A stretch of DNA of 64,000 nucleotides. Origin: Octopus sinensis. Taxonomy: Eukaryota. The stretch is from positions 21,018,001 to 21,082,000 of the forward strand of contig NC_043000.1 in NCBI RefSeq assembly GCF_006345805.1, read 5' to 3'. The stretch's first letter is position 1; each line of letters starts with the position of its first letter. This document shows positions 675-61,763 of this stretch, one piece after another. Under the pieces are notes generated by a model that was given only the letters and a program-made list of their open reading frames with translations, did not search any database and was not told where the DNA came from. The translations under genes were made by a program, and so were the position numbers.

Positions 675-3525
675 ATTTCGTGTTGCAAGACAGTGTGTGA
701 GAGAGAATCGTGATGTGGTAGGAGAGAAATGTGTTCGCATGGAGGATGGTTCACTTGCGCTAAATGAGGATGCAAAGAGAGAAGCTTGGAGACGCCACTA
801 TGAAAGGTTACTGAATGAGGAAAATGAATGGGATAAAGAGAGTCTGCCGAATGTTGACCCTACAGAGGGACCAGCTATCCGAGTTGATAGTCCGTGGTAG
901 CTAAGGCAATTAGAAGCATGAAGACAGGGAAAGCCCCAGGCCCATCAGGAATTACTGCAGAGATGCTCAAAATATCTGGCAGTGTCGGCTATAACCCAGT
1001 CACCCGTATAGTCAACCAGGTGATACACGAAGGAGTCATACCCAATGACTGGTGCAGCAGCATACTAGTCAACTGCTACAAAGGTAAAGGTGATGCCCTA
1101 GATACAAATAATTACAGAGGTATCAAGCTGTTGGATCAAGTAATGAAGGTTACGGAGAGGGTCATAGCCCAACTAATTAGAGAGAGAGTTAGTTTAGATG
1201 AGATGCAGTTTGGGTTCGTGCCAGGGAAAAGTACCACTGATGCTATATTCCTGGTAAGGCAGCTGCAGGAGAAATACCTAGCCAAAGATAAGCCTCTGTA
1301 CCTGGCTTTCGTTGACACGGAGAAAGCTTTTGATAGGGTCCCCCGATCCCTTATCTGGTGGTCAATGAGGAAACTAGGGATAGATGAATGGCTGGTGAGG
1401 ACTGTGCAAGCCATGTACAGAGATGCCGTAAGTAAGGTTAGGGTTGGCAACATGTACACAGAAGAATTCAAAGTAGAGGTTGGGGTCCACCAGGGTTCAG
1501 TACTCAGCCCCCTCCTATTTATCATAGTACTCCAGGCAATTACGGAGGAATTCAAGACAGGCTGTCCCTGGGAGCTCCTCTACGCTGACGACCTTGCTCT
1601 TATTGCTGAGTCACTATCAGAACTGGAGAAGTTCCAGGTGTGGAAGGAGGGTTTAGAATCAAGGGGCCTTAGAGTCAACCTAGCTAAAACCAAAGTACTA
1701 ATAAGTAGAAAGGTAGACAATCCACAATATCTTCAGGAAGATGGCCCTGCTCGATCTGTAGAAAAGGTTGTAGGTAGAAACTCTATAAGATGTACCCAGT
1801 GTAAGCTATGGACACATAAGAGGTGCAGCAATGTCAAAGGTAGGCTAACTGGGAAGATAGTTTTTGTATGTGGCAGATGCTCGGGAGCATTAACCTCCGA
1901 AAATCTGCAGAAAACAACTTCCGTCACTTTCCAGGGGGAAAAACTAGAAGTAGTTGATAGCTTCCGTTATCTAGGTGACCAAGTCAGTAGGGGGGTGGGT
2001 GCGCTGAAAGTGTAACTGCTAGAATAAGAATAGCCTGGGCAAAGTTTAGGGAGCTCTTACCTCTGCTGGTGACTAAAGGCCTCTCGCTCAGAGTAAAAGG
2101 CAGACTGTATGATGCGTGTGTACGAACAGCCATGCTACATGGCAGCGAAACATGGGCCGTGACTGCTGAGGACATGCGTAAGCTCGTGAGGAATGAAGCC
2201 AGTATGCTCCGATGGATGTGTAATGTCAGTGTACATACTCGACAGAGCGTTAGCACCTTGAGAGAAATGTTGTACCTAAGAAGCATCAGTTGTGGTGTGC
2301 AAGAGAGACGATTGCGCTGGTATGGTCATGTGGCGAGAATGGATGAAGATAGGTGTGTGAGAAAGTGCCAATCCCTAGCAGTTGAGGGAACCCGTGGAAG
2401 AGGTAGACCCAGGAAAACCTGGGACGAGGTGGTGAAGCACGACCTTCGAACTTTAGGCCTCACTGAGGAAATGACCAGAGACCGAGACCTTTGGAAATAT
2501 TCTGTACGTGAGAAGACCAGGCAGGACAAGTGAGCCCAGCCCACTTATGAATGCCTTTCCTCCCTTGGACACAAAGACCGGTTGAGGCAAGCGAAGTCGA
2601 TATAGAACCTCATCCGACGACAGACACCCATGCCAACCCCCCATGCTTGCGAAGACATGTTGGGGCAAGCGAAATCGAAATCGAAATCGAAATCGAAACC
2701 GAATTGAACCAGCCGGATCCCTGGCCTGGTGGTACGTAAAAAGCACTATCCGACTCGTGGCCGTGGCACGTAAAATACTCCAATGCGACCGTACGACAGG
2801 CACCATGCCAACCCCCTTTGCTTGTGAAGACATGTTGGGGCAAGCGAAATCGAAATCGAATTGAACCAGCCAGGATCCCTGGTCTGGTGGTACGTAAAAA
2901 GCACTATCCGACTCGTGGCCGTGGCACGTAAAATACTCCAATGCGACCGTACGACAGGCACCCTTGCCAACCCCCTTTGCTTGTGAAGACATGTTGGGGC
3001 AAGCGAAATCGAAATCGAATTGAACCAGCCAGGATCCCTGGTCTGGTGGTACGTAAAAAGCACTATCCGACTCGTGGCCGTGGCACGTAAAATACTCCAA
3101 TGCGACCGTACGACAGGCACCCATGCCAACCCCCTTTGCTTGTGAAGACATGTTGGGGCAAGCGAAATCGAAATCGAATTGAACCAGCCAGGATCCCTGG
3201 TCTGGTGGTACGTAAAAAGCACTATCCGACTCGTGGCCGATGCCAGCACCGCCTCGACTGGCTTCCGTGCCGGTGGCACATAAAATACACCAATCTGACC
3301 GTGGCCGTTGCCAGCCCCGCCTGGCACCTGTGCAGGTGGCACGTAAAAAGCACCCACTACACTCACGGAGTGGTTGGCGTTAGGAAGGGCATCCAGCTGT
3401 AGAAACATTGCCAAATTAGACTGGAGCCTGGTGCAGCCTTCTGGCTTCCCAGAACCCCGGTCGAACCGTCCAACCCATGCTAGCATGGAGAACGGACGTT
3501 AAACGACGATGATGATGATGATGAT
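675..3525 (+). mobile_element. 5'-truncated RTE-clade LINE: frameshifted RT (ORFs 697-900, 894-2015, 2069-2533), PHD finger, tandemly repeated 3' UTR, (GAT)n tail
   Basis: YRGIKLL, QFGF, AFDRVP, GVHQGSVLSP, LLYADD, FRYLG and WYGHVARM motifs; tail GGACGTTAAACGACGATGATGAT. Confidence 0.92.
2625..3239 (+). repeat. Tandem array of a 158-176 bp unit (about 3.8 copies) in the RTE 3' UTR
   Basis: Unit starts at 2625, 2801, 2959 and 3118; contains a variable (GAAATC)n run. Confidence 0.92.
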
Positions 3526-28404: not shown

Positions 28405-29457
28405 CCCTTTCGTTACTATATTTCTGACCAAAATACACCCCTTATGTGTTTCAATTAATTTCTAACATAATCATAAATTTAGTCTGGTTTCATTAAACAA
28501 CTATAACTTTTTTATTTATCAATATATTAACGTGAATTTTGGAAGATAATTTAATGAAATGTTCTCAACCAATTCTATACTATAATTTTTGTCACAAAGT
28601 GACTCTAATTGCAGGTAGATACAGGTAAATTCAACAAAATATAAAATTATTAAAATTTTGTTCAAACATCGCTATAGAAAATGGGTTATTAGCTAATATT
28701 CAATTGGGTATACAACAAAATTTTACGATAGAATTTGTTATTCTGGGTAACTTTCTGATACCCATAATAATATTTATGGCAAAATAAGCCTTAATTTCAT
28801 TTAAGGTTATGGGAAACCACAAAGTATCCTTTCTTTCGTTTTGTTTACATTTAGCGTAACGGTTCATTTCCGCCGTAATGATTTCAAATAGGCTCATTCG
28901 AAAAAGTAAAAAGAAATAGTCTAAGGCTTTACTCTTCTGGGAAAGTCTGTGGCTTGGTCCAGTTTCTTCAGAAAAATCACCGAAAGAAACAGTTTTTAAA
29001 TTTTCACTCCATTCGGGTGCCAATTCATTTTCTTTATCGCTGTCGGAGCTCTCGGATTCACTGTTTTCACTTTCGGAAAATGAAACATCAGATTCATTAT
29101 CAAATACCACGTGCTTTTTTTTTTTCAGTCATAGAGTTAGATTTATGAAGGTCTTCAGTAGAAAATCCTTCGAATTCTGACTCGCTGCTTGATATAATGA
29201 AATTCGTATCCATTTTTTGTCAGAATTACAAATTTTGAAAACACAATAGGAACAAATTTTGGGAAAAAATCTCCCAAAATTACACTTCGATTTTTGTACA
29301 AAACTGTAGTTGAACTCTTTACGAAGTATAATACGTATTTTCACGAATGTACTAAAGAGATTTGCTCTAATATTCTCATTTAAGTATGAATAGGTAAATT
29401 CGGGCGGTTTGGTGACATTAACCAAAATTTTTTTTGGGTGGTTTGGTAACGAAAGGG
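28405..29457 (-). mobile_element. Internally deleted piggyBac retaining the transposase N-terminus (ORF 28700-29110)
   Basis: Perfect TTAA at 28401 and 29458; TIR CCCTTTCGTTAC; acidic N-terminus, YFFLLF..EIITAEMNRYA, EIKAYFAINIIMGI. Confidence 0.9.
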
Positions 29458-35976: not shown

Positions 35977-38740
35977 CTGTAAATCCTCGAGTATAGTCCG
36001 CCCTTGAGTATAATACGCAGGGGATTTTAAGGGGCTGTCATCATCATCATCATCATCATCATCGTTTAGCGTCCGTTTCCATGCTAGCATGGGTTGGACG
36101 GTTCAACTGGGGTCTGGGAAGCCAGAAGGCTGTACCAGGCCCAGTCTGATCTGGCAATGTTTCTACGGCTGGATGCCCTTCCTAACGTCAACCACTCCAT
36201 GAGTGTAGTGGGTGCTTTTTACGTGCCACCGGCACAGGTGCCAGACGAGTCTGGCAAACGGCCACAATCGGATGGTGCCTTTTATGTGCCACCGGCACGG
36301 GGGCCAGGCGAGGCTGGCAACGACCACGAACGGATGGTGCTTTTTACGTGCCACCGGCACGAGGCCAGTCGGGGCGGCACTGGCAATGGCCACGTTCGGA
36401 TGGTTCTCTTACGTGCCACCGGCACTGGTATCTCAGCTGCAATTTCCATTGATCGATTTCGATTCTGATTCTCACTTGCCTCAACAGGTTTTCACAAGTA
36501 GAGTTTTGTGTCCCAAGAAGGGAAGGTATGCATAAGTGGACTGGCTACATCCCGTGTAGAAGGCCACGGGTTATGGTCTCACTTGTCCAGCCGGGTCTTC
36601 TCACGCACAGCATACTTCCAGAGGTCTCGGTCTCTAGTCATTTCCTCAGTCTGCCTCTTCCACAGGTTCCCTCAACCGCTAGGGTGTGGCACTTTTTCAC
36701 ACAACTATCTTCATCCATTCTCGCCACATGACCATACTGGTAAACGTCTCTCTTGCACACCACATCTGATGCTTCTTAGGTCCAGCTTTTCTCTCAAGGT
36801 ACTTACACTCTGTCGAGTATGAATACTGACATTACACATCCATCGGAGCATACTGGCTTCATTTCTTGCGAGCTTACGCATATCCTCAGCAGTCATGGCC
36901 CATGTTTCACTGCCATGTAGCATGGCTGTTCATACACACGCGTCATACATTTTGCCTTTTACTCTGAGCGAGAGGCCTTTTGTCACCAGCAGAGGTAAGA
37001 GCTCTCTGAACTTTGCCCAAGCTATTCTTACTCTAGCAGTTACACTTTCAGCACACCCACCCCCGCTACTGACTTGGTCACCTAGGTAACGGAAGCTATC
37101 AACTATTTCTAGTTTTTCTCCCTGGAAAGTGACAGAAGTTGGTCTCAGAGCATTTTCAGTGTTTATTGTTCCTGAGCATCTGCCACATACAAAAACTATC
37201 TTCCCAGTTAGCCTTCCTTTGACATTGCTGCACCTCTTATGTGTCCATAGCTTACACTTGGTGCATCTTATAGAGTTTCTACCTACACCTTTTCAACAGA
37301 TCGAGCAGGGCCATCTACCTGAAGGCGTTTGTGATTTGTCTACCTTCCTACTTATTACGACTTTGGTTTTAGCTAGATTGACTCTAAGGCCCTTCGATTC
37401 TAATCCTTGCTTCCACACCTGAAACTTCTCCTCCAGTTCTGATAGTGACTCAGCAATTAGAGCAAGGTCATCAGCATAGAGGAGCTCCCAAGGGCATCCT
37501 GTCTTGAATTCCTCCGTTATTGCCTGGAGGACTATGATAAATAGGAGGGGGCTGAGTACTGAGCCTTGGTGGACCCCTACCTCTACCCGGAATTCTTCAC
37601 TGTACTCGTTGCCAACCCTCACCTTACTTACAGCATCCCTGTACATGGCTTGCACAGCTCTCACCAGCCATTCATCTATCCCTAGTTTCCTCATTGACCA
37701 CCAGATAAGAGATTGGGGGACCCTGTCGAAGGCTTTCTTCATGTCAACAAAAGTCAGGTACAGGGGCTTATCTTTGGCTAGGTATTTCTCCTGCAGCTGC
37801 CTTACCAGGAATATAGCATCAGTGGTACTTTTCCCTGGCACGAACCCAAACTGCATCTCATCTAAACTAACTCTCTCTCTAATTAGTTGGTCAATGACCG
37901 TCTCCGTAACCTTCATTACCTGATCCAACAGCTTGATGCCTCTGTAATTATTTGTATCTAGGGCGTCACCTTTACCTTTGTAACAGTTGACTATTATGCT
38001 GCTACACCAGTCATTGGGTATGACTCCTTCGTGTATCACTTGATTAACTATACGGGTGACTAGGCTATAGCCGACACTACCAGATATTTTGAGCATCTCT
38101 GCAGTGATTCCTGATGGGCCTGGGTCTTTCCCTGTCTTCATGCTTCTAATTGCCTTAACTACCAAGGAACTGTCAACTCGGATAGCTGGTCCCTCTGTTG
38201 GGTCAACATTCGGCAGACTCTCTTTATCCCATTCATTTTCTTTATTCAGCAACCTTTTATAGTGGCGTCTCCAAACCTCTCTCTGAACTTCTGAAAAACC
38301 TAAACCTTGTGTATAATATGCACCCCTTCTCTAACTTGAGTCGTACATAATTAAGCCAGCAGCACCTAGTCGAACAAATATTTCCGTGCATGTGCAATAC
38401 AATAATGGTGATGTTCTGTTATATGGGAATGTAAATATGTTTGCAAATTGTTTTTGTTACATGTTATTCTGTGTTCTGAATACTTTTATTTTAATAAATG
38501 TTGCTTACTGCAAGTTATGGATGATTCTTTTATGACTTCATTGCTTTCCGGTTTAGCTTAAGGTATTTTCGTGCCCGACATCAGAAAATGCATCTGAATA
38601 AACATTGCCAGACAGCAAATAGAGACTCGGACATTGCTTGGAAAATATTTTTCATTTTTAACCTCGTATATAGTACGCACTAGGGATTTTGACCTTTAAA
38701 TTTTGGGGAAAAAGTGTGAATTATACTCGAGGATTTACGG
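35977..38740. mobile_element. pogo/Tc1-type MITE with TA TSD, split by a younger RTE
   Basis: TA-CTGTAAATCCTCGAGTATA ... TATACTCGAGGATTTACGG-TA. Confidence 0.82.
36048..38283 (-). mobile_element. 5'-truncated RTE LINE (RT ORF 37293-38252, PHD finger with a nonsense codon, modular 3' UTR)
   Basis: Near-identical protein to the 675-2533 copy; (GAT)n tail at about 36048-36065. Confidence 0.92.
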
Positions 38741-39996: not shown

Positions 39997-40111
39997 CAAA
40001 CCTCTCTTGATTTTCAACAAAGGCACTTTGGCATGAAGTGGAGTACACTGGATCTCTCTTTGTGCAGTTGACAGCAATATTCTTCGCTTGTTATTTCCAA
40101 GGTCAATTAAA
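39997..40111 (-). CDS. CFAP20DC: CFAP20DC coding exon 5 (LIDLGNNKRRILLSTAQREIQCTPLHAKVPLLKIKRGL)
   Basis: ttttccag acceptor, gtaagt donor, 115 nt, phase 2/0. Confidence 0.9.
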
Positions 40112-40404
40112 CTGGAAAATTAAACATTGAATAAAATTTACATATTAAACAATAGCCAAGATAATTTTTTTTAAATATTAGCCACAGGCTAAAATTGTAT
40201 TGTTTTTTGTTTTTTTTACCAAATAATTTTTTGAATTAGCTTACCAATATTCTTTGCATAAACCTTTTAGCATTTAATTCGACCATATCAGGCCAAAATA
40301 TTCAAACTGGCCATATCTAGCCTCTCACACTTTTTTTCCAATGTCATTCTAAAAATAAACAATTGCATCAACAAAATTTCGAAGCTATGAGATAATGTAC
40401 GATT

Positions 40405-40850
40405 ATCATCATCATCGTTTAATGCCTGCTTTCCATGCTAGCATGGGTTGGACAGTTTGACTGAGGGCTGGCGAACCAGATGGCTGCACCAGGCTCCAGT
40501 CTTGATCTGGCAGAGTTTCTACACCTGGATGCCCTTCCTAACGCCAACCACTCCAAGAGTGTAGTGGGTGCTTTTACGTGCCACCGGCATGGGGGCCAGT
40601 CAGGCAGTACTGGCAACAACCTCACTCGAATCTTTTTACACATGCCAACAGCACAGGTGCCAGTAAGGTGATGCTGGTAACAATCCTGCTCGAATGGTGC
40701 CTCCTACATGCCACCGACACAGAAGCCAGTTAGCAGCTCTGGCAATGATCACGCTCGGATGGTGCTCTTAGCACCCTACTAGCATGGGGCACAAGTGCCA
40801 GTAAGGTGAAGCTGGCAACGATCACACTCGAATGGTGTCTTTTATGTGCC
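40405..40850 (-). mobile_element. RTE 3' UTR fragment
   Basis: Reverse-complement terminal module with (ATC)n. Confidence 0.8.
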
Positions 40851-41745
40851 ACAATTCAAAACAATATGAACAAGAGCACTCAGAGAGTGCAAACTTCTGC
40901 CAACATACTCTCAACGATTAGCCGAGATGATTTATAAAATGAGAATATCTGAAATAAACTCAACTGCTCTCACAAACGAGAATACTAAAAATGAACCTGA
41001 CTGCTCTCAAAAATTAAGTAAAAAAACAGGAAAAATAATCCAGAATCCTTGTCCGGTACCAGATCAATTCCAAAATCTAATCAGTTTGTGCCAGTCACAA
41101 AGCCAAACATCTCTGAAAGTTTCATCCAAATCCATCCAGGAGTTCTCAAGATATCTTGTCCACAGTCAAACCAACAAACACAACTGAAAACAATACCTCC
41201 TCCTTTGCTAAGGCAGAGATAATAAATAAACGTTACATTTTACAGAGTACCTTGAATGCTGAATGGTTAAACATGTCAGCAGTAATGATCTTTCAATCGT
41301 AAGTACAGCATCTTAACCACAAGGCCACAGGCATTCACCCCCAAGATCATACCTTGTCTTAAAAAGTGACACTGGTACAATGTTCTGAATAAAACGATGG
41401 AACAGTCATTACTAGAATACCTTAGATCATAGGTCTAATTGACCAGGGCCATCTTGGAGCTAAATTACAAGACAAATGTTGCTGTGAAGTTGTTACTCAT
41501 GACTACTCAGTTTAGTCATATTAGATTTCCATATGTATATATTTTTTAATAATATATTATTATTAATATTAGGAAATCGATATCAGAAAACTCCTCAGAA
41601 AGATATACGCGTGTGAAAAATAATTGTTGTATTAAAAATATATAAATAAATAAATATAAATATGTATAAAAATATATGTAAATATGTATATGTATAAATA
41701 TATAATATATGACAGTTTAAAAGTTTTGAATTAAGTATTTAAAGC

Positions 41746-41835
41746 ATCTTACGATCGTTTCACAGAAGTGTTGTCCCTATAATGAAATCCTATATTGATA
41801 AGCATTTATAGACAACTCTTCTGCTCTTCAGAGAT
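41746..41835 (-). ncRNA. Type I hammerhead ribozyme-like motif (family A), sense to CFAP20DC intron 4
   Basis: AUCU-CUGAAGA-GCAGAAG..CUUCUGU-GAA-ACGAUCGU-A-AGAU; complete core, long stem II, GUA site. Confidence 0.75.
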
Positions 41836-42025
41836 ATAAAATTTGAATTTTTTTATAACATATTGAATGGTAGTTTTTTTTTTTAATTTGAAGCAATACT
41901 ATAAAATGGTGTTTGTTTGAAATATAAATTTAAAATTAAAAGCTACTGCTTTTGATGAGTCTTAAATTCCATATATACTTCCTTGGTTGGTCTTTCCATT
42001 CGTGGGACTTCATAAAGTAATTTCC

Positions 42026-42098
42026 CTACTTCAACAGGTGTTCCAACCCTAATCCTTCACATAACAAGCAGGAATACTCACCACTACACTACTAAGGA
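42026..42098 (-). pseudogene. Decayed tRNA-Asp-like relic
   Basis: TCCTTAGTAGTGTAGTGGTGAGTATTCCTGCTTGTTATGTGAAGGATTAGGGTTGGAACACC resembles metazoan tRNA-Asp(GTC) with CpG-type decay. Confidence 0.55.
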
Positions 42099-42152
42099 TT
42101 GGAATGGCAGTTTGGGTACAAATATACTGGATACAAACATACTGAGTCTTAC

Positions 42153-42225
42153 CCAAGTTCAAGAGAGAAATCTTGGCCTCTTCCCAAGTATAACTGGACT
42201 ATTAGAAATTGTTGGATCAAAACCA
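42153..42225 (-). CDS. CFAP20DC: CFAP20DC coding exon 4 (LVLIQQFLIVQLYLGRGQDFSLELG)
   Basis: ttttcag acceptor, gtaaga donor, 73 nt, phase 1/2. Confidence 0.9.
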
Positions 42226-47319: not shown

Positions 47320-48283
47320 AATGTTTACATTGAAGTTAATGAGATAATTCTGAGTGGTTTATGAAACAGCTGTAACCTATTCAGAAGTATTAAAATTCTT
47401 CTTGCCTTTTACTTCTTGTTTTATATGTGGATACAGAAAAGGCTGCATAGTTAAGAAGTTTAATTCATAACCACTTCCCATTTTTTTCAGGGTCAATTCC
47501 ACTGTGTGGCACCTTGGGTACTTTCCACTATAGCTCTGGTTTGACCAATACTACATGAGGGAATTTAGTAGATGGAAACTGTAGGAAGTTCACTGTGTGT
47601 GTGTGTGTGTGAATGTGCATGAATGTCTATGTTCCATGCATGTCACTGCTTCAATGAAGTGATGCTGTTGATATTGATGTTCCTTGTTAACATTATAACA
47701 GATTTACTCTTTTCTTTGAAAGATGTGTGCAATAAAGACACATCTTTATTGAAAAAAAAGGCAAGGGTTGGCAACATTAAGAATGTCCAGCCATAAAATC
47801 CAGCCTCAACTCTCCATCTAAACTCATACTAATGGACATTAAACAAATGAACTAACATATTCTTTTATTTGTTTCAGTCATTTGACTGCAGCCATGCTGG
47901 AGCACTGCCTTTAGTTGAGCAAATCGACCCCAGGACTTATTCTTTGTAAGCCTAGTACTTATTCTATCGGTCTCTTTTGCCGAACTGCTAGCTGACGGGG
48001 ATGTAAACACACCAGCATCGGTTGTCAAGCGATGTTAGGGGGACAAACACAGACACACAAACATATACATACACATATATATATATATCGACGAGCTTCT
48101 TTCAGTTTCCGTCTACCAAATCTACTCACAAGGCTTTGGTTGGCCTGAGGCTATAGTAGAAGACACTTGCCCAAGGTGCCACGCAGTGGGACTGAACCCA
48201 GAACCATAATCTATAGAAATCTATAGTAGCAGAGTGGTATCTAAGAGTTCAGAAAAGGTCATTTGGAAGGTCTCCACAATGAT

Positions 48284-48383
48284 NNNNNNNNNNNNNNNNN
48301 NNNNNNNNNNNNNNNNNNNNNNNNNNNNNNNNNNNNNNNNNNNNNNNNNNNNNNNNNNNNNNNNNNNNNNNNNNNNNNNNNNN
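48284..48383. other. Assembly gap (100 N, probably of unknown true size)
   Basis: Run of exactly 100 N. Confidence 0.99.
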
Positions 48384-48942: not shown

Positions 48943-49024
48943 ACAATAGAGAGACAGACATCATCCCGTACCGGAGCGAGACCTCCTTAACTAGACTTAA
49001 CACAATATTGTGTGCTTATTTATT

Positions 49025-50350
49025 GAAGAAGTCATGCTTAGACGAGCCCAAATGAAAGAATTAGAGCAGCAAATTAAAAGGAGGGCTGGGTATGCCGTGG
49101 TTGATGATGCGCAGACACGTGCTGAGACTGCGACGTCTTCGGCTCTATGTAGACGACGGTGAACAGGTGTGGTCGCCGTTTGTGAGGCACGCTTTCCCGC
49201 AGCTCGTCTCCATGACAGAACTGCAGTCGTGGATAAAAAAGAGGCCGAGGAAGGGCGAATGGCACCGTGAGTGTCGCGTTGCTCTCAAGCAACTATGCCG
49301 TCCCGGGTCGACCTTGAGTGATTTCAACACAACCCAAGCATTCTATAGGGGATTAGTGGAGGGGAGGTACGACGACAATCTTGGGGCGAACCTGGGCGTC
49401 GACGAGGAATACCTGACCCGCCTGTTTGAGACGACTTTCGGGCCGGGACCTATGGACAACTTCCAGAGATCCCTAGCGTGGCAGTGCTATCGAGAAGCGC
49501 TACCCGTTTGGGATAAGCTCTATAGGCATGGCTCGAGAAACACGGGGCCGACCTGCCCGAGATGCGGGCAGAGATACGAAACCGTTCTACACGCAATCGT
49601 GCAGTGTCCAACCATCTCCGACCTGTGGGTTTATGTCGAACGACTGCTGTCACGTGTGGGACGAGTCGGTTTATCAGCCGAGTCTATCGTAAATATCGTC
49701 ACGCCTCCTTCCTTCAAACGGGAAGGAAGAGCTATTTTTATCATACTTGTGGCTATGGCGAAAGAATGTATCTGGTGGACGCGCCTGAAAGGATTAGAGA
49801 CAAACACTTCCCTCTCTGGTCAATCTCTCATCAACTTCTTCAAGTATCACTTGAAGAGGAAAGTGGGAGTAGAGAGGCAAGTTTTGTCTAGTGAATGTTT
49901 TAAAAAAAGATGGGTGAATGTAGCAAGGGTGGCACGTATAAATGACGAAGCCACCTTGACTATGATTCTATGAACCGTAAAAATTAATACAGAGAATTGC
50001 TTAATTGCAAAAAAAAAGAAGAAATATAACATGTAACTTCATTGACCGAGGTTACCGTGGTCTTTTCCGTAGGCTTTTCTTTCCACGGGTAAACCTCACC
50101 TGTCTTCCCCTTTACACTTCATATTGGCATTTCTGTGATAACGATCCCTATTGATCAATTTTTTTCCTTTCCCTTTTTTTCCTCACCCCTTTTTTAAAAA
50201 TTTTATTTTATCCCCCCATTTTTTTGTCCTCTTTCTTTCCATTTATGATCCCTTTTGATCGAAAACCAAACCCCCTTCTTTTACCCCCAAAAGAAAAGCT
50301 CTACCTTGTAATTTTGTCCTGTCTGTGTGCAGCCCTGGGTGGCTAATAAA
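49025..50350 (+). mobile_element. L1/Tx1-clade LINE 3' part (ORF 49092-49973 with zf-RVT-like CPRC..ETVLHAIVQCP) plus pyrimidine-rich 3' UTR
   Basis: CxxC...HxxxxC motif with the preceding FQRSLAWQCYREALPV segment; ends GGCTAATAAA before (TATC)n. Confidence 0.8.
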
Positions 50351-53542: not shown

Positions 53543-53873
53543 GAAGGCGCATGGCTCAGTGGTTAGAGCGTCGAACTTACGATCGTGAGGTTGTGAGTCC
53601 GATTCCCGGACCAGGCTGCGTGTTGTGTTCTTGGGCAAGATACTTTATTTCACGTTGCTCCAGTTCACTCAGCTGTAGAATTGAGTTGCGATGTCACAGG
53701 TGCCAGGCTGTATCGGCCTTTGCCTTTCCCTTGGACAACACTGGTGGCGTGGAGAGGGGAGGCCGGTATGCATGGGCGACTGCTGGTCTTCCATAAACAA
53801 CCTTGCCCGGACTTGTGTCTGGGAAGGTAACTTTCTAGGTGCAATCCCATGGTCAGTCTTGACCAAAGGGGGT

Positions 53874-54720: not shown

Positions 54721-55094
54721 GAGGGCATTATACATACATGCCAGAAGGCATTATACATACATGCCACACTAGAGGGACATTAGTCATTTCTACCAAAATA
54801 TTACTAATCCCACCGAATGCAATTTTCAAAGTAGACATTTAAAATATAGACTGTATCACGTGATTTCATACTTACGTATTCATCAGCAGGCCTGAATGTT
54901 TATAAATAAACAACGACCTGCCCCGCTTAAGCCGATCAGCTAATGATCAACATCAACGAAGCACATGGGTGAGTTTACAATATTACATCCGGATAAATGG
55001 CAACTTTTACGAATTGCCTTTCGGAGAGAAAAGTTTTTTCGGAATAAAAATTTAGCATTAAGGACAACTACTTAATATATATATATACTGAGTT

Positions 55095-56035: not shown

Positions 56036-56039
<4 letters not shown>

Positions 56040-56625
56040 TTAGAAATAATAAGGGGAAAAAATTGAACATTAATTTGATTAATATCAATTTAAAACCAGT
56101 GGTCTACCATATAGAAAAATATAAAGATTCAGAAAAATTGTATTACATACATATAAGAGGGATGACCACTAAGTGGACATCCATATGCTAGAAGTAGGCT
56201 TCCTATGGTCTTACCACTAAGAAAGGAATGTTCTCAAGAACATACGTTCTGGCGTTTGCTAAATTTTCTTCTAGCATATGGATGTCCACTTAGTGGTCAT
56301 CCCTCTTATATGTATATATATATATATTATATATATATATAAATTAGAAATAATAAGGGGAAAAAATTGAACATTAATTTGATTAATATCAATTTAAAAC
56401 CAGTGGTCTACCATATAGAAAAATATAAAGATTCAGAAAAATTGTATTACATACATATAAGAGGGATGACCACTAAGTGGACATCCATATGCTAGAAGTA
56501 GGCTTCCTATGGTCTTACCACTAAGAAAGGAATGTTCTCAAGAACATACGTTCTGGCGTTTGCTAAATTTTCTTCTAGCATATGGATGTCCACTTAGTGG
56601 TCATCCCTCTTATATGTATATATAT
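56036..56625. repeat. Two tandem 304-bp units, each with a perfect 47-bp inverted repeat
   Basis: Arms 56148-56194 / 56268-56314 and 56452-56498 / 56572-56618. Confidence 0.9.
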
Positions 56626-57199
56626 ATATATTTATACAAACACACACACACACACACCACACACACACACACACAACACACACACACATATATATATATA
56701 TTTGTGTGTGTGTGTGTGTGTGTTTGCCCTCCCACCATTGCTTGACAACCGATACTGGTGTGTTTATGTCCCCGGAACTTACCGGTTCGCCAAAATATAA
56801 CCGATAGAATAAGTATTAGGCTTACAAAGAATAAGTCCTGGGGTTGATTTCTTCGGCTAAAACCCTTTAAGGCCGTGCTCTATCATGGCCAGAGTCAAAT
56901 GACTCAAACAAGTAAAAGGATAAAAGTATACATACATACATACATATATACATACATACATACATACATACATACATACATGTCTGTGAGTGCATGTACA
57001 TATTAGTATATTTTTTTATTACCCAGCAATAAAAAGGGCTTCAGTCGGTTACATTTCCATCTTCTCCACCACTACATTTTATTTATTTATTTTACAATTC
57101 CTGCCGTTTAATCGAACAGCCATTAAATTTGCCTTGTTTCCTTTCAAATGAATAATAAACTGAATGTTATTCCAATATAGTCTTCTATAATGCCTTGCG

Positions 57200-57964: not shown

Positions 57965-58705
57965 GCATACACACACATATATACATACATACATGCATAC
58001 CTACCTACCTACCTACCTACCTACCTACATACATACATACATACATACATACACACATACATACACACATACATACATACACACATACATACATACATAC
58101 ACACATATATACATACATACATACATACATGCATGCATAGACACACACACACATACACTGACCCACACACATGCGCACAAACAGACAAAAAGGAACGCAG
58201 TGTAAATAACGGAAAGAGTCAAGACTATTGAAAAGGTTGCAAGACGCAACGAAAATTTTAAGAAAATAAAAATAAGAGGAAATTTTACCGGTGAATGTGT
58301 TAAATTCTAAGGCACAAAAAGAAAATGACTCTCTTCAGATAAAACAGTATATATATATATATATATATAATATTAGGGAATAAATCCAAACTTACAGGGA
58401 AAAATCAGATTTAGGATTGAATCCAATTTTATAGTAAAATATTATATTATATTAAATTAGAGATAAAACCACTATTAGGCAAATCATACAATGAAAAACT
58501 TAAGCCAATATATAAGATTATTTAATTTATATTATTTAAATATATAACAAAATTATTAAAAAAATATAATTAATATAACACTACGATCGTTTCATGGCTG
58601 TTAATTTCTTTAAATTTTCGAGTTACAGTCATTCATCAGGTGGTTTAAATATTTAACTTGGCGAGGTTTATCATTGATTTGCCTAATAGTGGTTTTATCT
58701 CTAAT

Positions 58706-58774
<69 letters not shown>

Positions 58775-59872: not shown

Positions 59873-60222
59873 ATATATATATATATTAGGGAATAAATCC
59901 AAACTTACAGGGAAAAATCAGATTTAGGATTGAATCCAATTTTATAGTAAAATATTACATTATATTAAATTAGAGATAAAACCAAACCACCATTAGGCAA
60001 ATCATACAATGAAAAACTTAAGCCAATATATAAGATTATTTAATTTATATTATTTAAATATATAACAAAATTATTAAAAAAATATAATTAATATAACACT
60101 ACGATCGTTTCATGGCTGTTAATTTCTTTAAATTTTCGAGTTACAGTCATTCATCAGGTGGTTTAAATATTTAACTTGGCGAGGTTTATCATTGATTTGC
60201 CTAATAGTGGTTTTATCTCTAA

Positions 60223-61406: not shown

Positions 61407-61763
61407 TTCTACACTGAAATCTATGAGTTATTAACAGTAGTATTTTTAAAAAAATTGATTAATCTGAAATCTATCAATCAGCGGGTAACGGTTTCAATCC
61501 CACAACTGGGAACCTTGAGCAAATGTCTTCTACTTCAACTCTCAGGACGAACTATAGTTTGTGAGTGAATTTGGTTCATGGAAACATTCCATGAACCAAA
61601 TTCAATCACAAACTATAGTTCGTCCTGAGAGTTGAAGTAGAAGACATTTGCTCAAGGTTCCCAGTTGTGGGATTGAAACCGTTACCCCCTGATTGATAGA
61701 TTTCAGATTAATCAATTTTTTAAAAAATACTACTGTTAATAACCCATAGATTTCAGTGTAGAA
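61407..61763. repeat. Near-perfect palindrome, 177-bp arms with a 3-nt spacer
   Basis: Centre at 61585; about 4 mismatches by eye. Confidence 0.92.

What the first reader, a model, noticed from the sequence alone, without database searches (positions are those of the whole stretch)
41570..41860. Intact-looking hammerhead in the sense strand of a CFAP20DC intron
Seen: on the gene's strand, between exons 4 and 5, AUCU/AGAU stem I, CUGAAGA core, a long stem II (GCAGAAG-GUUGUC-CUAUAAAUG pairing with CAUUAUAG-GACAAC-CUUCUGU), GAAA, a perfect ACGAUCGU palindrome and a GUA cleavage triplet. It would be in every pre-mRNA. Inference: cleavage could modulate splicing or expression. The palindromic stem III suggests it needs a second copy in trans, which could limit harm.
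Basis: partly seen in the sequence, partly recalled or inferred. Interest (0 to 1): 0.72.

Follow-up and report, generated by a model that had tools for sequence, protein, structure and literature searches.

The report
Solo dimer-type hammerhead motif in an intron
A complete hammerhead self-cutting RNA motif sits in the sense strand of an intron of a cilia-gene relative, but it is the weak, pair-dependent kind carried by mobile elements in many animal genomes, so it is most likely a passenger and not a gene switch.

Summary
On the minus strand at 41836-41745 there is a full type-I hammerhead: UAUCU / CUGAAGA / 63-nt helix II / GAAA / palindrome ACGAUCGU / A17 / AGAUG. The predicted cut is between 41750 and 41749. 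It lies in sense, 316 nt into a 2,041-nt intron (42152-40112) of a CFA20-domain gene. A strict descriptor finds 2 such motifs in the window against 0.015 expected from shuffles. A looser one adds two more, so there are four, all on the minus strand. Three of them share the exact 12-mer GAAACGAUCGUA.

A short palindromic helix III is the published hallmark of metazoan type-I hammerheads of Penelope-like elements and non-LTR retrozymes, which work as dimers. Folding agrees. The monomer prefers an inactive fold that buries the cut site (-23.0 against -18.7 kcal/mol). The homodimer minimum-energy structure is exactly the double hammerhead with an 8-bp helix III (-52.2).

[quoted passage not shown] The motif has a G·U at 10.1-11.1 and no recognisable loop-loop contacts. 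Regulation of the host gene is therefore unsupported. Verdict: a new member of a known kind, of low to moderate interest.

The parts
41745..41836 (-). Complete type-I hammerhead motif (92 nt)
   Evidence: Read from sequence. Descriptor hit with helix I 5 bp, helix II 7+7 bp, palindromic helix III.
41832..41836 (-). Helix I, 5' strand UAUCU
   Evidence: Pairs with AGAUG at 41749-41745, four Watson-Crick pairs plus one U·G.
41825..41831 (-). Core box C3-A9, CUGAAGA (N7 = A)
41762..41824 (-). Helix II, a 63-nt imperfect hairpin. Basal pair is G10.1·U11.1.
   Evidence: Predicted in every fold. It is far longer than the 4-6 bp of canonical metazoan hammerheads (PMC4209133).
41758..41761 (-). Core box G12 A13 A14 A15.1 (GAAA)
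41751..41758 (-). Helix III palindrome ACGAUCGU. As a monomer it forms 2 bp plus a GAUC loop. As a dimer it forms an 8-bp intermolecular helix.
   Evidence: exact palindrome, 4 observed against 0.22 expected. (dimer minimum-energy fold uses it as helix III).
41749..41750 (-). Predicted scissile bond, 3' of A17 (41750) and 5' of A1.1 (41749). GUA triplet at 41752-41750.
   Evidence: Position follows from standard hammerhead numbering. Cleavage itself was not tested.
41745..41749 (-). Helix I, 3' strand AGAUG
40112..42152 (-). Host intron (2,041 nt, GT...AG). The hammerhead starts 316 nt from the 5' splice site, and the cut site is about 1,640 nt from the 3' splice site.
   Evidence: Splice sites and reading frame across the junction (LELG|LIDLGNNK) read. 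CFA20_dom match.
42153..42225 (-). Upstream exon (..FLIVQLYLGRGQDFSLELG)
39997..40111 (-). Downstream exon (LIDLGNNKRRILLSTAQREIQCTPLHAKVPLLKIKRGL)
58579..58642 (-). Related hammerhead: CAC-CUGAUGA-helix II 39 nt-GAAACGAUCGUA-GUG. Same 12-mer as the finding.
60097..60160 (-). Duplicate of the 58.6-kb hammerhead, 1,518 bp away in a tandem duplication
   Evidence: (D16).
54848..54892 (-). Third hammerhead type: CUGAUGA-AUACGUAAGUAU-GAAA-UCACGUGAU-A|CAG. Its own palindromic helix III is AUCACGUGAU.
58436..58712 (-). 277-nt strongly self-paired element carrying the 58.6-kb hammerhead. Retrozyme-monomer-like or MITE-like, with 42-bp terminal pairing, abutting (TA)n.
   Evidence: -78.3 kcal/mol, z = -11.1. 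(68% self-complementary over 290 nt).

Best explanation
This is a genuine type-I hammerhead motif of the class with a weak, palindromic helix III. In animals that class is carried by Penelope-like elements and their non-autonomous relatives, the non-LTR retrozymes. Here it is a solitary copy lodged in sense orientation in a 2-kb intron of a CFA20-domain (CFAP20DC-like) gene, so it is transcribed as part of the pre-mRNA.

On its own the RNA is predicted to adopt an inactive fold in which an extended helix I swallows the cleavage site. The catalytic fold becomes the preferred one only when two RNAs carrying ACGAUCGU pair to build an 8-bp helix III. There is no second copy in the intron or in the part of the gene seen here. 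The motif has a G·U at 10.1-11.1 and a helix II too long for loop-loop contacts. The next exon is only about 1.6 kb downstream. Self-cleavage of the pre-mRNA is therefore expected to be rare and slow relative to splicing, and the motif is most likely a neutral passenger of mobile-element origin.

Shown: motif, strand, intron, non-chance occurrence, sibling motifs, fold predictions.
Inferred: mobile-element origin of this particular copy, low activity, lack of host function.
For: - All core positions and three helices are present.
- Shuffles give 0.015 hits per window against 2 observed with the strict descriptor, and 4 motifs in all.
- The exact 12-mer GAAACGAUCGUA is shared with two other hammerheads at 58.6 and 60.1 kb.
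- A further hammerhead with its own palindromic helix III lies at 54.9 kb.
- The 58.6-kb copy sits in a 277-nt highly self-paired element next to (TA)n, as described for retrozyme RNAs and for PLE insertion preference (PMC7229834, PMC8557442).
- Monomer minimum-energy fold is -23.0 (inactive) against -18.7 for the hammerhead fold. The homodimer minimum-energy fold is the double hammerhead at -52.2 against 2 x -23.0. A heterodimer with the 58.6-kb copy also forms helix III.
- PMC4209133 states that most metazoan type-I hammerheads have a 1-2 bp helix III capped by a 2-4 nt palindromic loop, need a second copy, and show low activity in vitro.
- In Xenopus about 44% of retrozyme copies are intronic and monomers are evenly dispersed (bioRxiv 10.64898/2026.07.22.740005).
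- Slow intronic ribozymes do not disturb splicing.
- Cephalopod genomes already carry hundreds of annotated hammerheads (235 in giant squid, PMC6962438).
Against: - The flanks of this copy are not detectably homologous to the other hammerhead-bearing elements, nor to anything else in the window. Its membership of a repeat family is therefore inferred from the motif alone.
- No Penelope-like ORF is nearby.
- It is not in a tandem repeat. A possible decayed second copy 230 nt downstream is not statistically supported.
- It keeps two CpGs and a fully intact core, which could also reflect constraint.
- Rfam hammerhead models do not score it.
Confidence: 0.66

Rival explanations
1. Domesticated regulatory ribozyme. 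The hammerhead cuts the CFAP20DC-like pre-mRNA and tunes splicing or mRNA output. Activity may be gated by trans-dimerisation with other RNAs carrying the same palindrome.
For: - Sense orientation inside a constitutive-looking intron.
- Intact core with two CpGs retained.
- Heterodimer with the 58.6-kb type is predicted to form helix III.
- Precedents exist for conserved intronic ribozymes that affect host mRNA: amniote intronic hammerheads (PMC7761336) and the CPEB3 ribozyme (PMC10919898).
Against: - No conservation data could be obtained.
- Helix III is weak, 10.1-11.1 is G·U, and no tertiary-contact loops are recognisable.
- The inactive monomer fold is favoured by 4.3 kcal/mol.
- Only about 1.6 kb lies between the cut site and the next exon, so a slow bimolecular reaction would lose to splicing (framework).
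- The same motif class is scattered outside the intron.
Confidence: 0.08
2. Live or recently live mobile element using the host gene. This would be a retrozyme or PLE-derived unit that has no promoter of its own. Its sense orientation lets host read-through transcription produce element RNA, which is then processed when paired with other copies. The function serves the element, not the host.
For: - Retrozymes are reported to lack promoters and to depend on read-through transcription (PMC7761336).
- All four hammerheads in the window are on the gene's strand.
- The core is intact.
Against: - Only one cleavage site is present, so no unit-length RNA can be released.
- The surrounding 321 nt show no self-paired structure (z = +0.55), unlike the 58.6-kb element.
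- Four of four on one strand amounts to three independent events (p about 0.25).
- The copies at 54.9-60.1 kb probably lie upstream of the gene's CpG-rich putative promoter at 49-50 kb.
Confidence: 0.17
3. Chance or incidental. Either the core boxes happen to flank an unrelated hairpin (a miRNA-like or inverted-repeat hairpin), or the whole motif is a random match.
For: - Rfam finds no hammerhead here.
- Weak sub-threshold hairpin-type hits cover the helix II region: MIR3627 at 14.8 bits, E = 3.5.
- The sequence context is AT-rich.
Against: - Strict descriptor hits in shuffles average 0.015 per window.
- The exact 12-mer is shared with two canonical hammerheads.
- The homodimer minimum-energy fold reproduces the double hammerhead without any constraint.
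- The miRNA hits are far below gathering scores.
Confidence: 0.03

Closest known systems
Metazoan type-I hammerheads of non-LTR retrozymes and satellite-like repeats (newt satellite 2, Schistosoma, mussel, coral, axolotl; PMC7229834, PMC7761336)
   Same: - Type-I topology and full conserved core.
- Short helix III with a palindromic loop that allows a double-hammerhead dimer.
- Low-GC context.
- Occurs as dispersed monomers as well as repeats, often in introns.
- A sibling copy at 58.6 kb lies in a roughly 280-nt highly self-paired unit.
   Different: - This copy is solitary, not in a 170-400-bp tandem repeat.
- Helix II is 63 nt instead of about 4 bp plus loop.
- No recognisable loop 1-loop 2 contacts.
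- 10.1-11.1 is G·U.
- Not detected by the Rfam hammerhead models.
[quoted passage not shown] 2017, cited in PMC7761336)
   Same: - Longer helix II than canonical.
- Palindromic 15.2-16.2 region and loop 3.
- Dimer-dependent architecture.
- Extreme sequence variability between copies in one genome.
- Sibling copies abut (TA)n, the preferred target of some PLE clades (PMC8557442).
   Different: - No PLE reverse transcriptase or GIY-YIG ORF, and no pseudo-LTR, recognisable near this copy.
- The G10.1-C11.1 pair that the authors call highly conserved is absent from all four motifs here (G·U or A-U).
[quoted passage not shown]
Conserved intronic hammerheads of amniotes (HH9/HH10 type; de la Peña & García-Robles 2010, cited in PMC7761336) and the intronic CPEB3 HDV-like ribozyme (PMC10919898)
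   Same: Self-cleaving motif in the sense strand of an intron of a protein-coding gene.
   Different: Those are defined by deep conservation at orthologous sites and by activity as single motifs. Here conservation is untested, and the monomer is predicted to be inactive.

Membership tests
Hammerhead ribozyme, type I | Invariant core: C3 U4 G5 A6 N7 G8 A9 and G12 A13 A14 | tested here: met
   CUGAAGA at 41831-41825 and GAA at 41761-41759, no mismatch.
Hammerhead ribozyme, type I | A15.1-U16.1 pair and a non-G nucleotide at 17 (NUH cleavage triplet) | tested here: met
   A15.1 = 41758, U16.1 = 41751, A17 = 41750. Triplet is GUA.
Hammerhead ribozyme, type I | Three helices around the core, with helix I open (5' and 3' ends in helix I) | tested here: met
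   Helix I is 5 bp. Helix II is 14 bp with one mismatch, plus a distal part. Helix III is 2 bp plus GAUC loop as a monomer, or 8 bp as a dimer.
Hammerhead ribozyme, type I | G10.1-C11.1 closing pair of helix II (highly conserved in natural hammerheads, PMC4209133) | tested here: not met
   G10.1·U11.1 wobble here. The three sibling motifs have A-U. G10.1 itself is kept.
Hammerhead ribozyme, type I | Loop 1-loop 2 tertiary contacts needed for fast cleavage at physiological Mg2+ | tested here: inconclusive
   Helix II is at least 14 bp, so its loop is far from helix I. No canonical loop motifs are recognisable by eye. No tool here scores tertiary contacts.
Hammerhead ribozyme, type I | Score at or above the gathering threshold of an Rfam hammerhead covariance model | tested here: not met
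   No hammerhead hit at gathering, nor at E <= 10 on 501 nt. The sibling motifs are also missed. The models probably penalise the long helix II and the near-absent helix III.
Hammerhead ribozyme, type I | Site-specific self-cleavage giving 2',3'-cyclic phosphate and 5'-OH | not testable with these tools
   Needs in vitro transcription or end-mapping.
Dimer-dependent metazoan hammerheads (retrozyme / Penelope-like element class) | Helix III of 1-2 bp capped by a 2-4 nt palindromic loop | tested here: met
   A-U and C-G pairs closing GAUC. The whole 8-mer ACGAUCGU is a perfect palindrome.
Dimer-dependent metazoan hammerheads (retrozyme / Penelope-like element class) | Two copies can fold into a double hammerhead that is more stable than the monomers | tested here: met
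   Unconstrained cofold minimum-energy structure is the double hammerhead, -52.2 against -46.0 kcal/mol for two monomers. This is a prediction only.
Dimer-dependent metazoan hammerheads (retrozyme / Penelope-like element class) | Located in short tandem repeats (170-400 bp) or in the pseudo-LTRs of a PLE | tested here: not met
   Solitary. No significant second copy within 400 nt. No PLE ORF nearby. The sibling copies at 58.6 and 60.1 kb are direct repeats, but 1,518 bp apart.
Dimer-dependent metazoan hammerheads (retrozyme / Penelope-like element class) | Member of a dispersed multi-copy family in the same genome | tested here: inconclusive
   Three independent hammerheads in 64 kb, two types sharing the 12-mer. 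Flanks of this copy match nothing else in the window. The rest of the genome was not available.
Domesticated intronic ribozymes (HH9/HH10, CPEB3 type) | Conservation at the orthologous intronic site across species | not testable with these tools
   No related eukaryotic sequence was reachable: protein search empty, exact-ORF look-ups empty, metagenome scan empty.
Domesticated intronic ribozymes (HH9/HH10, CPEB3 type) | Sense orientation within an intron of the host pre-mRNA | tested here: met
   Minus strand, as for the CFA20-domain exons.
Domesticated intronic ribozymes (HH9/HH10, CPEB3 type) | Competent as a single motif | tested here: not met
   The hammerhead-compatible monomer fold is 4.3 kcal/mol above the inactive minimum-energy fold. 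This is a prediction, not an assay.

The most novel reading that the evidence does not exclude
The motif is a lineage-specific, domesticated, dimer-gated ribozyme. Under this reading, CFAP20DC-like pre-mRNA is cut only when abundant retrozyme-type RNAs carrying the same ACGAUCGU palindrome (such as the 58.6-kb type) pair with it in trans. Host gene output in testis or ciliated tissue would then respond to mobile-element RNA load. This would be a trans-activated natural hammerhead acting on a host pre-mRNA.
Probability: 0.04. Interest if true: 0.8.

Novelty: new member of a known kind. Interest (0 to 1): 0.28.

Why it matters
Taken as read, it adds one more example to the thousands of mobile-element-type hammerheads in invertebrate genomes. 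It also shows that Rfam models miss this long-helix-II, palindromic-helix-III variant. That is useful for annotating cephalopod genomes: four motifs in 64 kb suggest a sizeable family that has not been catalogued. It would matter much more if the site proved conserved and cleaved in vivo, because natural examples of intronic ribozymes that tune a host mRNA are very few.

Tried and rejected
- Rfam at gathering and at E <= 10, on the window and on each motif: no hammerhead hit, only low-complexity miRNA noise.
- Protein search with the concatenated CFA20-domain exons, to reach orthologues: nothing.
- Exact-product look-ups of three window ORFs near the motif, to fetch other assemblies: none on record.
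- Metagenome scan for the inverted-repeat end of the 58.6-kb element: 0 hits. I did not use the second scan. A generic hammerhead pattern would return mostly random matches and would not bear on this locus.
- Homology between the flanks of this motif and the 58.6-kb element: alignment scores lie within about 2 sd of shuffles.
- A decayed second copy 230 nt downstream (41607-41575): suggestive by eye, but in the top 0.7% of window tiles only post hoc, so not significant.
- The fourth ACGATCGT at 53579 is part of a tRNA-derived SINE, not a hammerhead.
- 'CUGAAGAG' at 58331 and 59775 has no matching 3' half.
- Search for a Penelope-like ORF: only LINE-type RVT_1 and a piggyBac-type fragment found.
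- The start-codon exon of the gene was not located.

Full report
**1. What is in the sequence**

Reading the minus strand gives a contiguous 92-nt motif:

5'-UAUCU | CUGAAGA | GCAGAAGAGUUGUC...GACAACACUUCUGU | GAAA | CGAUCG | U A | AGAUG-3'

- Helix I 5' strand: 41836-41832.
- Core box C3-A9: 41831-41825.
- Helix II hairpin: 41824-41762.
- G12-A15.1: 41761-41758.
- Palindrome ACGAUCGU (15.1 to 16.1): 41758-41751.
- A17: 41750.
- Helix I 3' strand: 41749-41745.

This is the type-I hammerhead layout, and every invariant core nucleotide is present.

- Only 92 of the 291 flagged bases belong to the motif. The remainder is AT-rich low-complexity sequence, and a 321-nt fold of the region shows no structure beyond helix II (z = +0.55).
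- Helix I reaches 5 bp with a U·G pair.
- The closing pair of helix II is G10.1·U11.1, not G-C.

**2. Is it more than chance?**

I wrote a descriptor requiring:
- CUGANGA;
- helix II of at least 4 contiguous pairs;
- GAAA;
- helix III as a hairpin or palindrome closed by A15.1-U16.1;
- H17;
- helix I of at least 3 pairs.

I ran it on both strands of the window and on 200 dinucleotide-preserving shuffles. The real sequence gives 2 hits (41831 and 54886, both minus). The shuffles give a mean of 0.015 and never more than 1.

A version that allows one helix mismatch and one core mismatch but requires a palindromic helix III returns this motif plus two identical ones at 58639 and 60157. The 12-mer GAAACGATCGTA occurs exactly three times, all on the minus strand. 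The 8-mer palindrome occurs 4 times against 0.22 expected. The fourth occurrence belongs to a tRNA-derived SINE and is unrelated.

The motif is real.

**3. Gene context**

Minus-strand open stretches give exons with clean AG/GT boundaries:
- 43949-43873
- 42630-42532
- 42225-42153
- 40111-39997
- 39809-39651

Three of these exons concatenated (43949-43873, 40111-39997 and 39809-39651) match Pfam CFA20_dom (PF05018) at E = 1.4e-16. Long serine-rich exons further downstream fit a CFAP20DC-like protein, an assignment from my own knowledge of the human protein.

The hammerhead lies in the 2,041-nt intron 42152-40112, in sense. It starts 316 nt after the 5' splice site, and the cut site is about 1,640 nt before the next exon. 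The exon numbers 4 and 5 are plausible but not proven, because I could not find the start-codon exon.

**4. What kind of hammerhead**

The helix III region is the informative part. As a hairpin it can form only A-U and C-G pairs around a GAUC loop. As a duplex between two copies it forms 8 bp.

[quoted passage not shown] The same group showed that classical type-I hammerheads belong to non-LTR retrozymes: 170-400-nt, low-GC, highly self-paired units found in molluscs among others (PMC7229834; review PMC7761336). A 2026 preprint links these retrozymes to Penelope-like elements. It finds about 44% of Xenopus copies in introns, with monomers evenly dispersed. A giant squid genome paper lists 235 Rfam hammerhead loci (PMC6962438).

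Folding supports the dimer reading:
- The unconstrained monomer minimum-energy fold (-23.0 kcal/mol) extends helix I across the cleavage site and half of the palindrome. This is an inactive fold.
- The best hammerhead-compatible monomer fold is -18.7.
- The unconstrained homodimer minimum-energy fold (-52.2) is exactly the double hammerhead: helix I, helix II and an 8-bp intermolecular helix III.
- A heterodimer with the 58.6-kb copy forms the same helix III (-34.7 against -28.4 for the separate RNAs).

**5. The neighbours**

The 58.6-kb and 60.1-kb copies (CAC-CUGAUGA-AUGACUGU...ACAGCCAU-GAAACGAUCGUA-GUG) lie in a 1.5-kb tandem duplication (D16/D17). Each sits inside a 277-nt element that is 68% self-complementary over its length. 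That element folds into a rod with z = -11.1 and abuts (TA)n, a preferred target of some Penelope-like clades (PMC8557442). It looks like a retrozyme monomer, or possibly a MITE-like element.

The 54.9-kb motif has a canonical 4-bp helix II with a GUAA loop and its own palindrome, AUCACGUGAU.

All four motifs have non-G-C 10.1-11.1 pairs. None is detected by the Rfam hammerhead models, even at E <= 10 on short stretches. This genome's hammerheads are thus a variant set that standard annotation misses.

**6. What cannot be shown**

The flanks of the intronic copy are not significantly similar to those of the 58.6-kb element, nor to anything else in the window. The only repeat in the intron is a SINE-like family at 40402-40852.

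A sequence 230 nt downstream (41607-41575) looks like a helix-II-deleted, mutated second copy. That would fit an old tandem dimer, but the score is not significant once the post hoc choice is allowed for.

No Penelope-like ORF is present. So the mobile-element origin of this copy rests on the motif class and on its siblings, and conservation is untested.

**7. How it most likely works**

The motif is transcribed in every pre-mRNA that spans the intron. As a lone copy it should mostly sit in the inactive fold. Cleavage would need a bimolecular encounter with another RNA carrying ACGAUCGU.

Even the better-behaved mussel retrozyme hammerhead cleaves at about 0.1 per minute, and PLE minimal hammerheads cleave poorly even as dimers. 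Work with intronic ribozymes shows that slow cleavage leaves splicing unaffected, whereas only fast ribozymes abort it (Dye 2006 and Fong 2009 as summarised in PMC2995048 and PMC10919898). In the CPEB3 case the half-life is matched to a 10-kb run to the next exon.

Here the run is about 1.6 kb, so a slow, partner-dependent reaction should rarely win. I therefore rate the motif as a neutral passenger (0.66). The alternatives are an element exploiting host read-through (0.17), a domesticated regulator (0.08), and chance or incidental (0.03).

**8. Novelty and score**

The kind is well known. This is a new member with some variant traits: a 63-nt helix II, G·U at 10.1-11.1, and invisibility to Rfam. 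A specialist would not be surprised by a sense intronic solo hammerhead in an invertebrate. Interest: 0.28. The most novel reading not excluded is a trans-activated, domesticated ribozyme that couples host mRNA output to retrozyme RNA load (probability about 0.04).

Noticed in passing
58579-58642 and 60097-60160 (minus); element 58436-58712: Two identical canonical-core hammerheads share the 12-mer GAAACGAUCGUA with the finding. Each sits inside a 277-nt strongly self-paired element (z = -11.1) next to (TA)n, within a roughly 1.5-kb tandem duplication. This is a candidate non-LTR retrozyme unit or MITE-like element.
   Followed up: partly
54848-54892 (minus): A third hammerhead type: 4-bp helix II with a GUAA loop, its own 10-nt palindromic helix III (AUCACGUGAU), and an AUA cleavage triplet. 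Solitary, near a mariner-like fragment.
   Followed up: partly
41575-41607 (minus): UAUAUCUUUCUGAGGAGUUUUCUGAUAUCGAU resembles a helix-II-deleted, core-mutated second copy of the hammerhead 230 nt downstream of the intact one. It would fit an old tandem dimer, but it is not statistically significant.
   Followed up: yes
whole window: None of the four hammerhead motifs is reported by Rfam 15 models, even at E <= 10 on short stretches. The lenient scan is instead flooded by microsatellite-driven miRNA false positives.
   Followed up: yes
53545-53700 (+) and related copies, e.g. 40402-40852: A tRNA-derived SINE at 53545-53700, whose anticodon-arm region happens to contain ACGATCGT. Separately, a SINE-like repeat with at least 10 copies in the window, one of them inside the same intron as the hammerhead.
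   Followed up: partly
891-2530 (+), 37296-38330 (-), 28703-29128 (-): Two LINE-type reverse transcriptase ORFs (Pfam RVT_1) and a piggyBac-type transposase fragment (DDE_Tnp_1_7). No Penelope-like GIY-YIG ORF seen.
   Followed up: partly
48283-48382; 49000-50000: A 100-N assembly gap. Just upstream on the gene's strand is a GC-rich (0.53), CpG-undepleted block that may be the promoter or first exon of the CFA20-domain gene.
   Followed up: no
56037-56632; 61407-61763: A perfect 304-bp tandem duplicate (100% identity), and a near-perfect palindrome with 177-nt arms and a 3-nt spacer.
   Followed up: no
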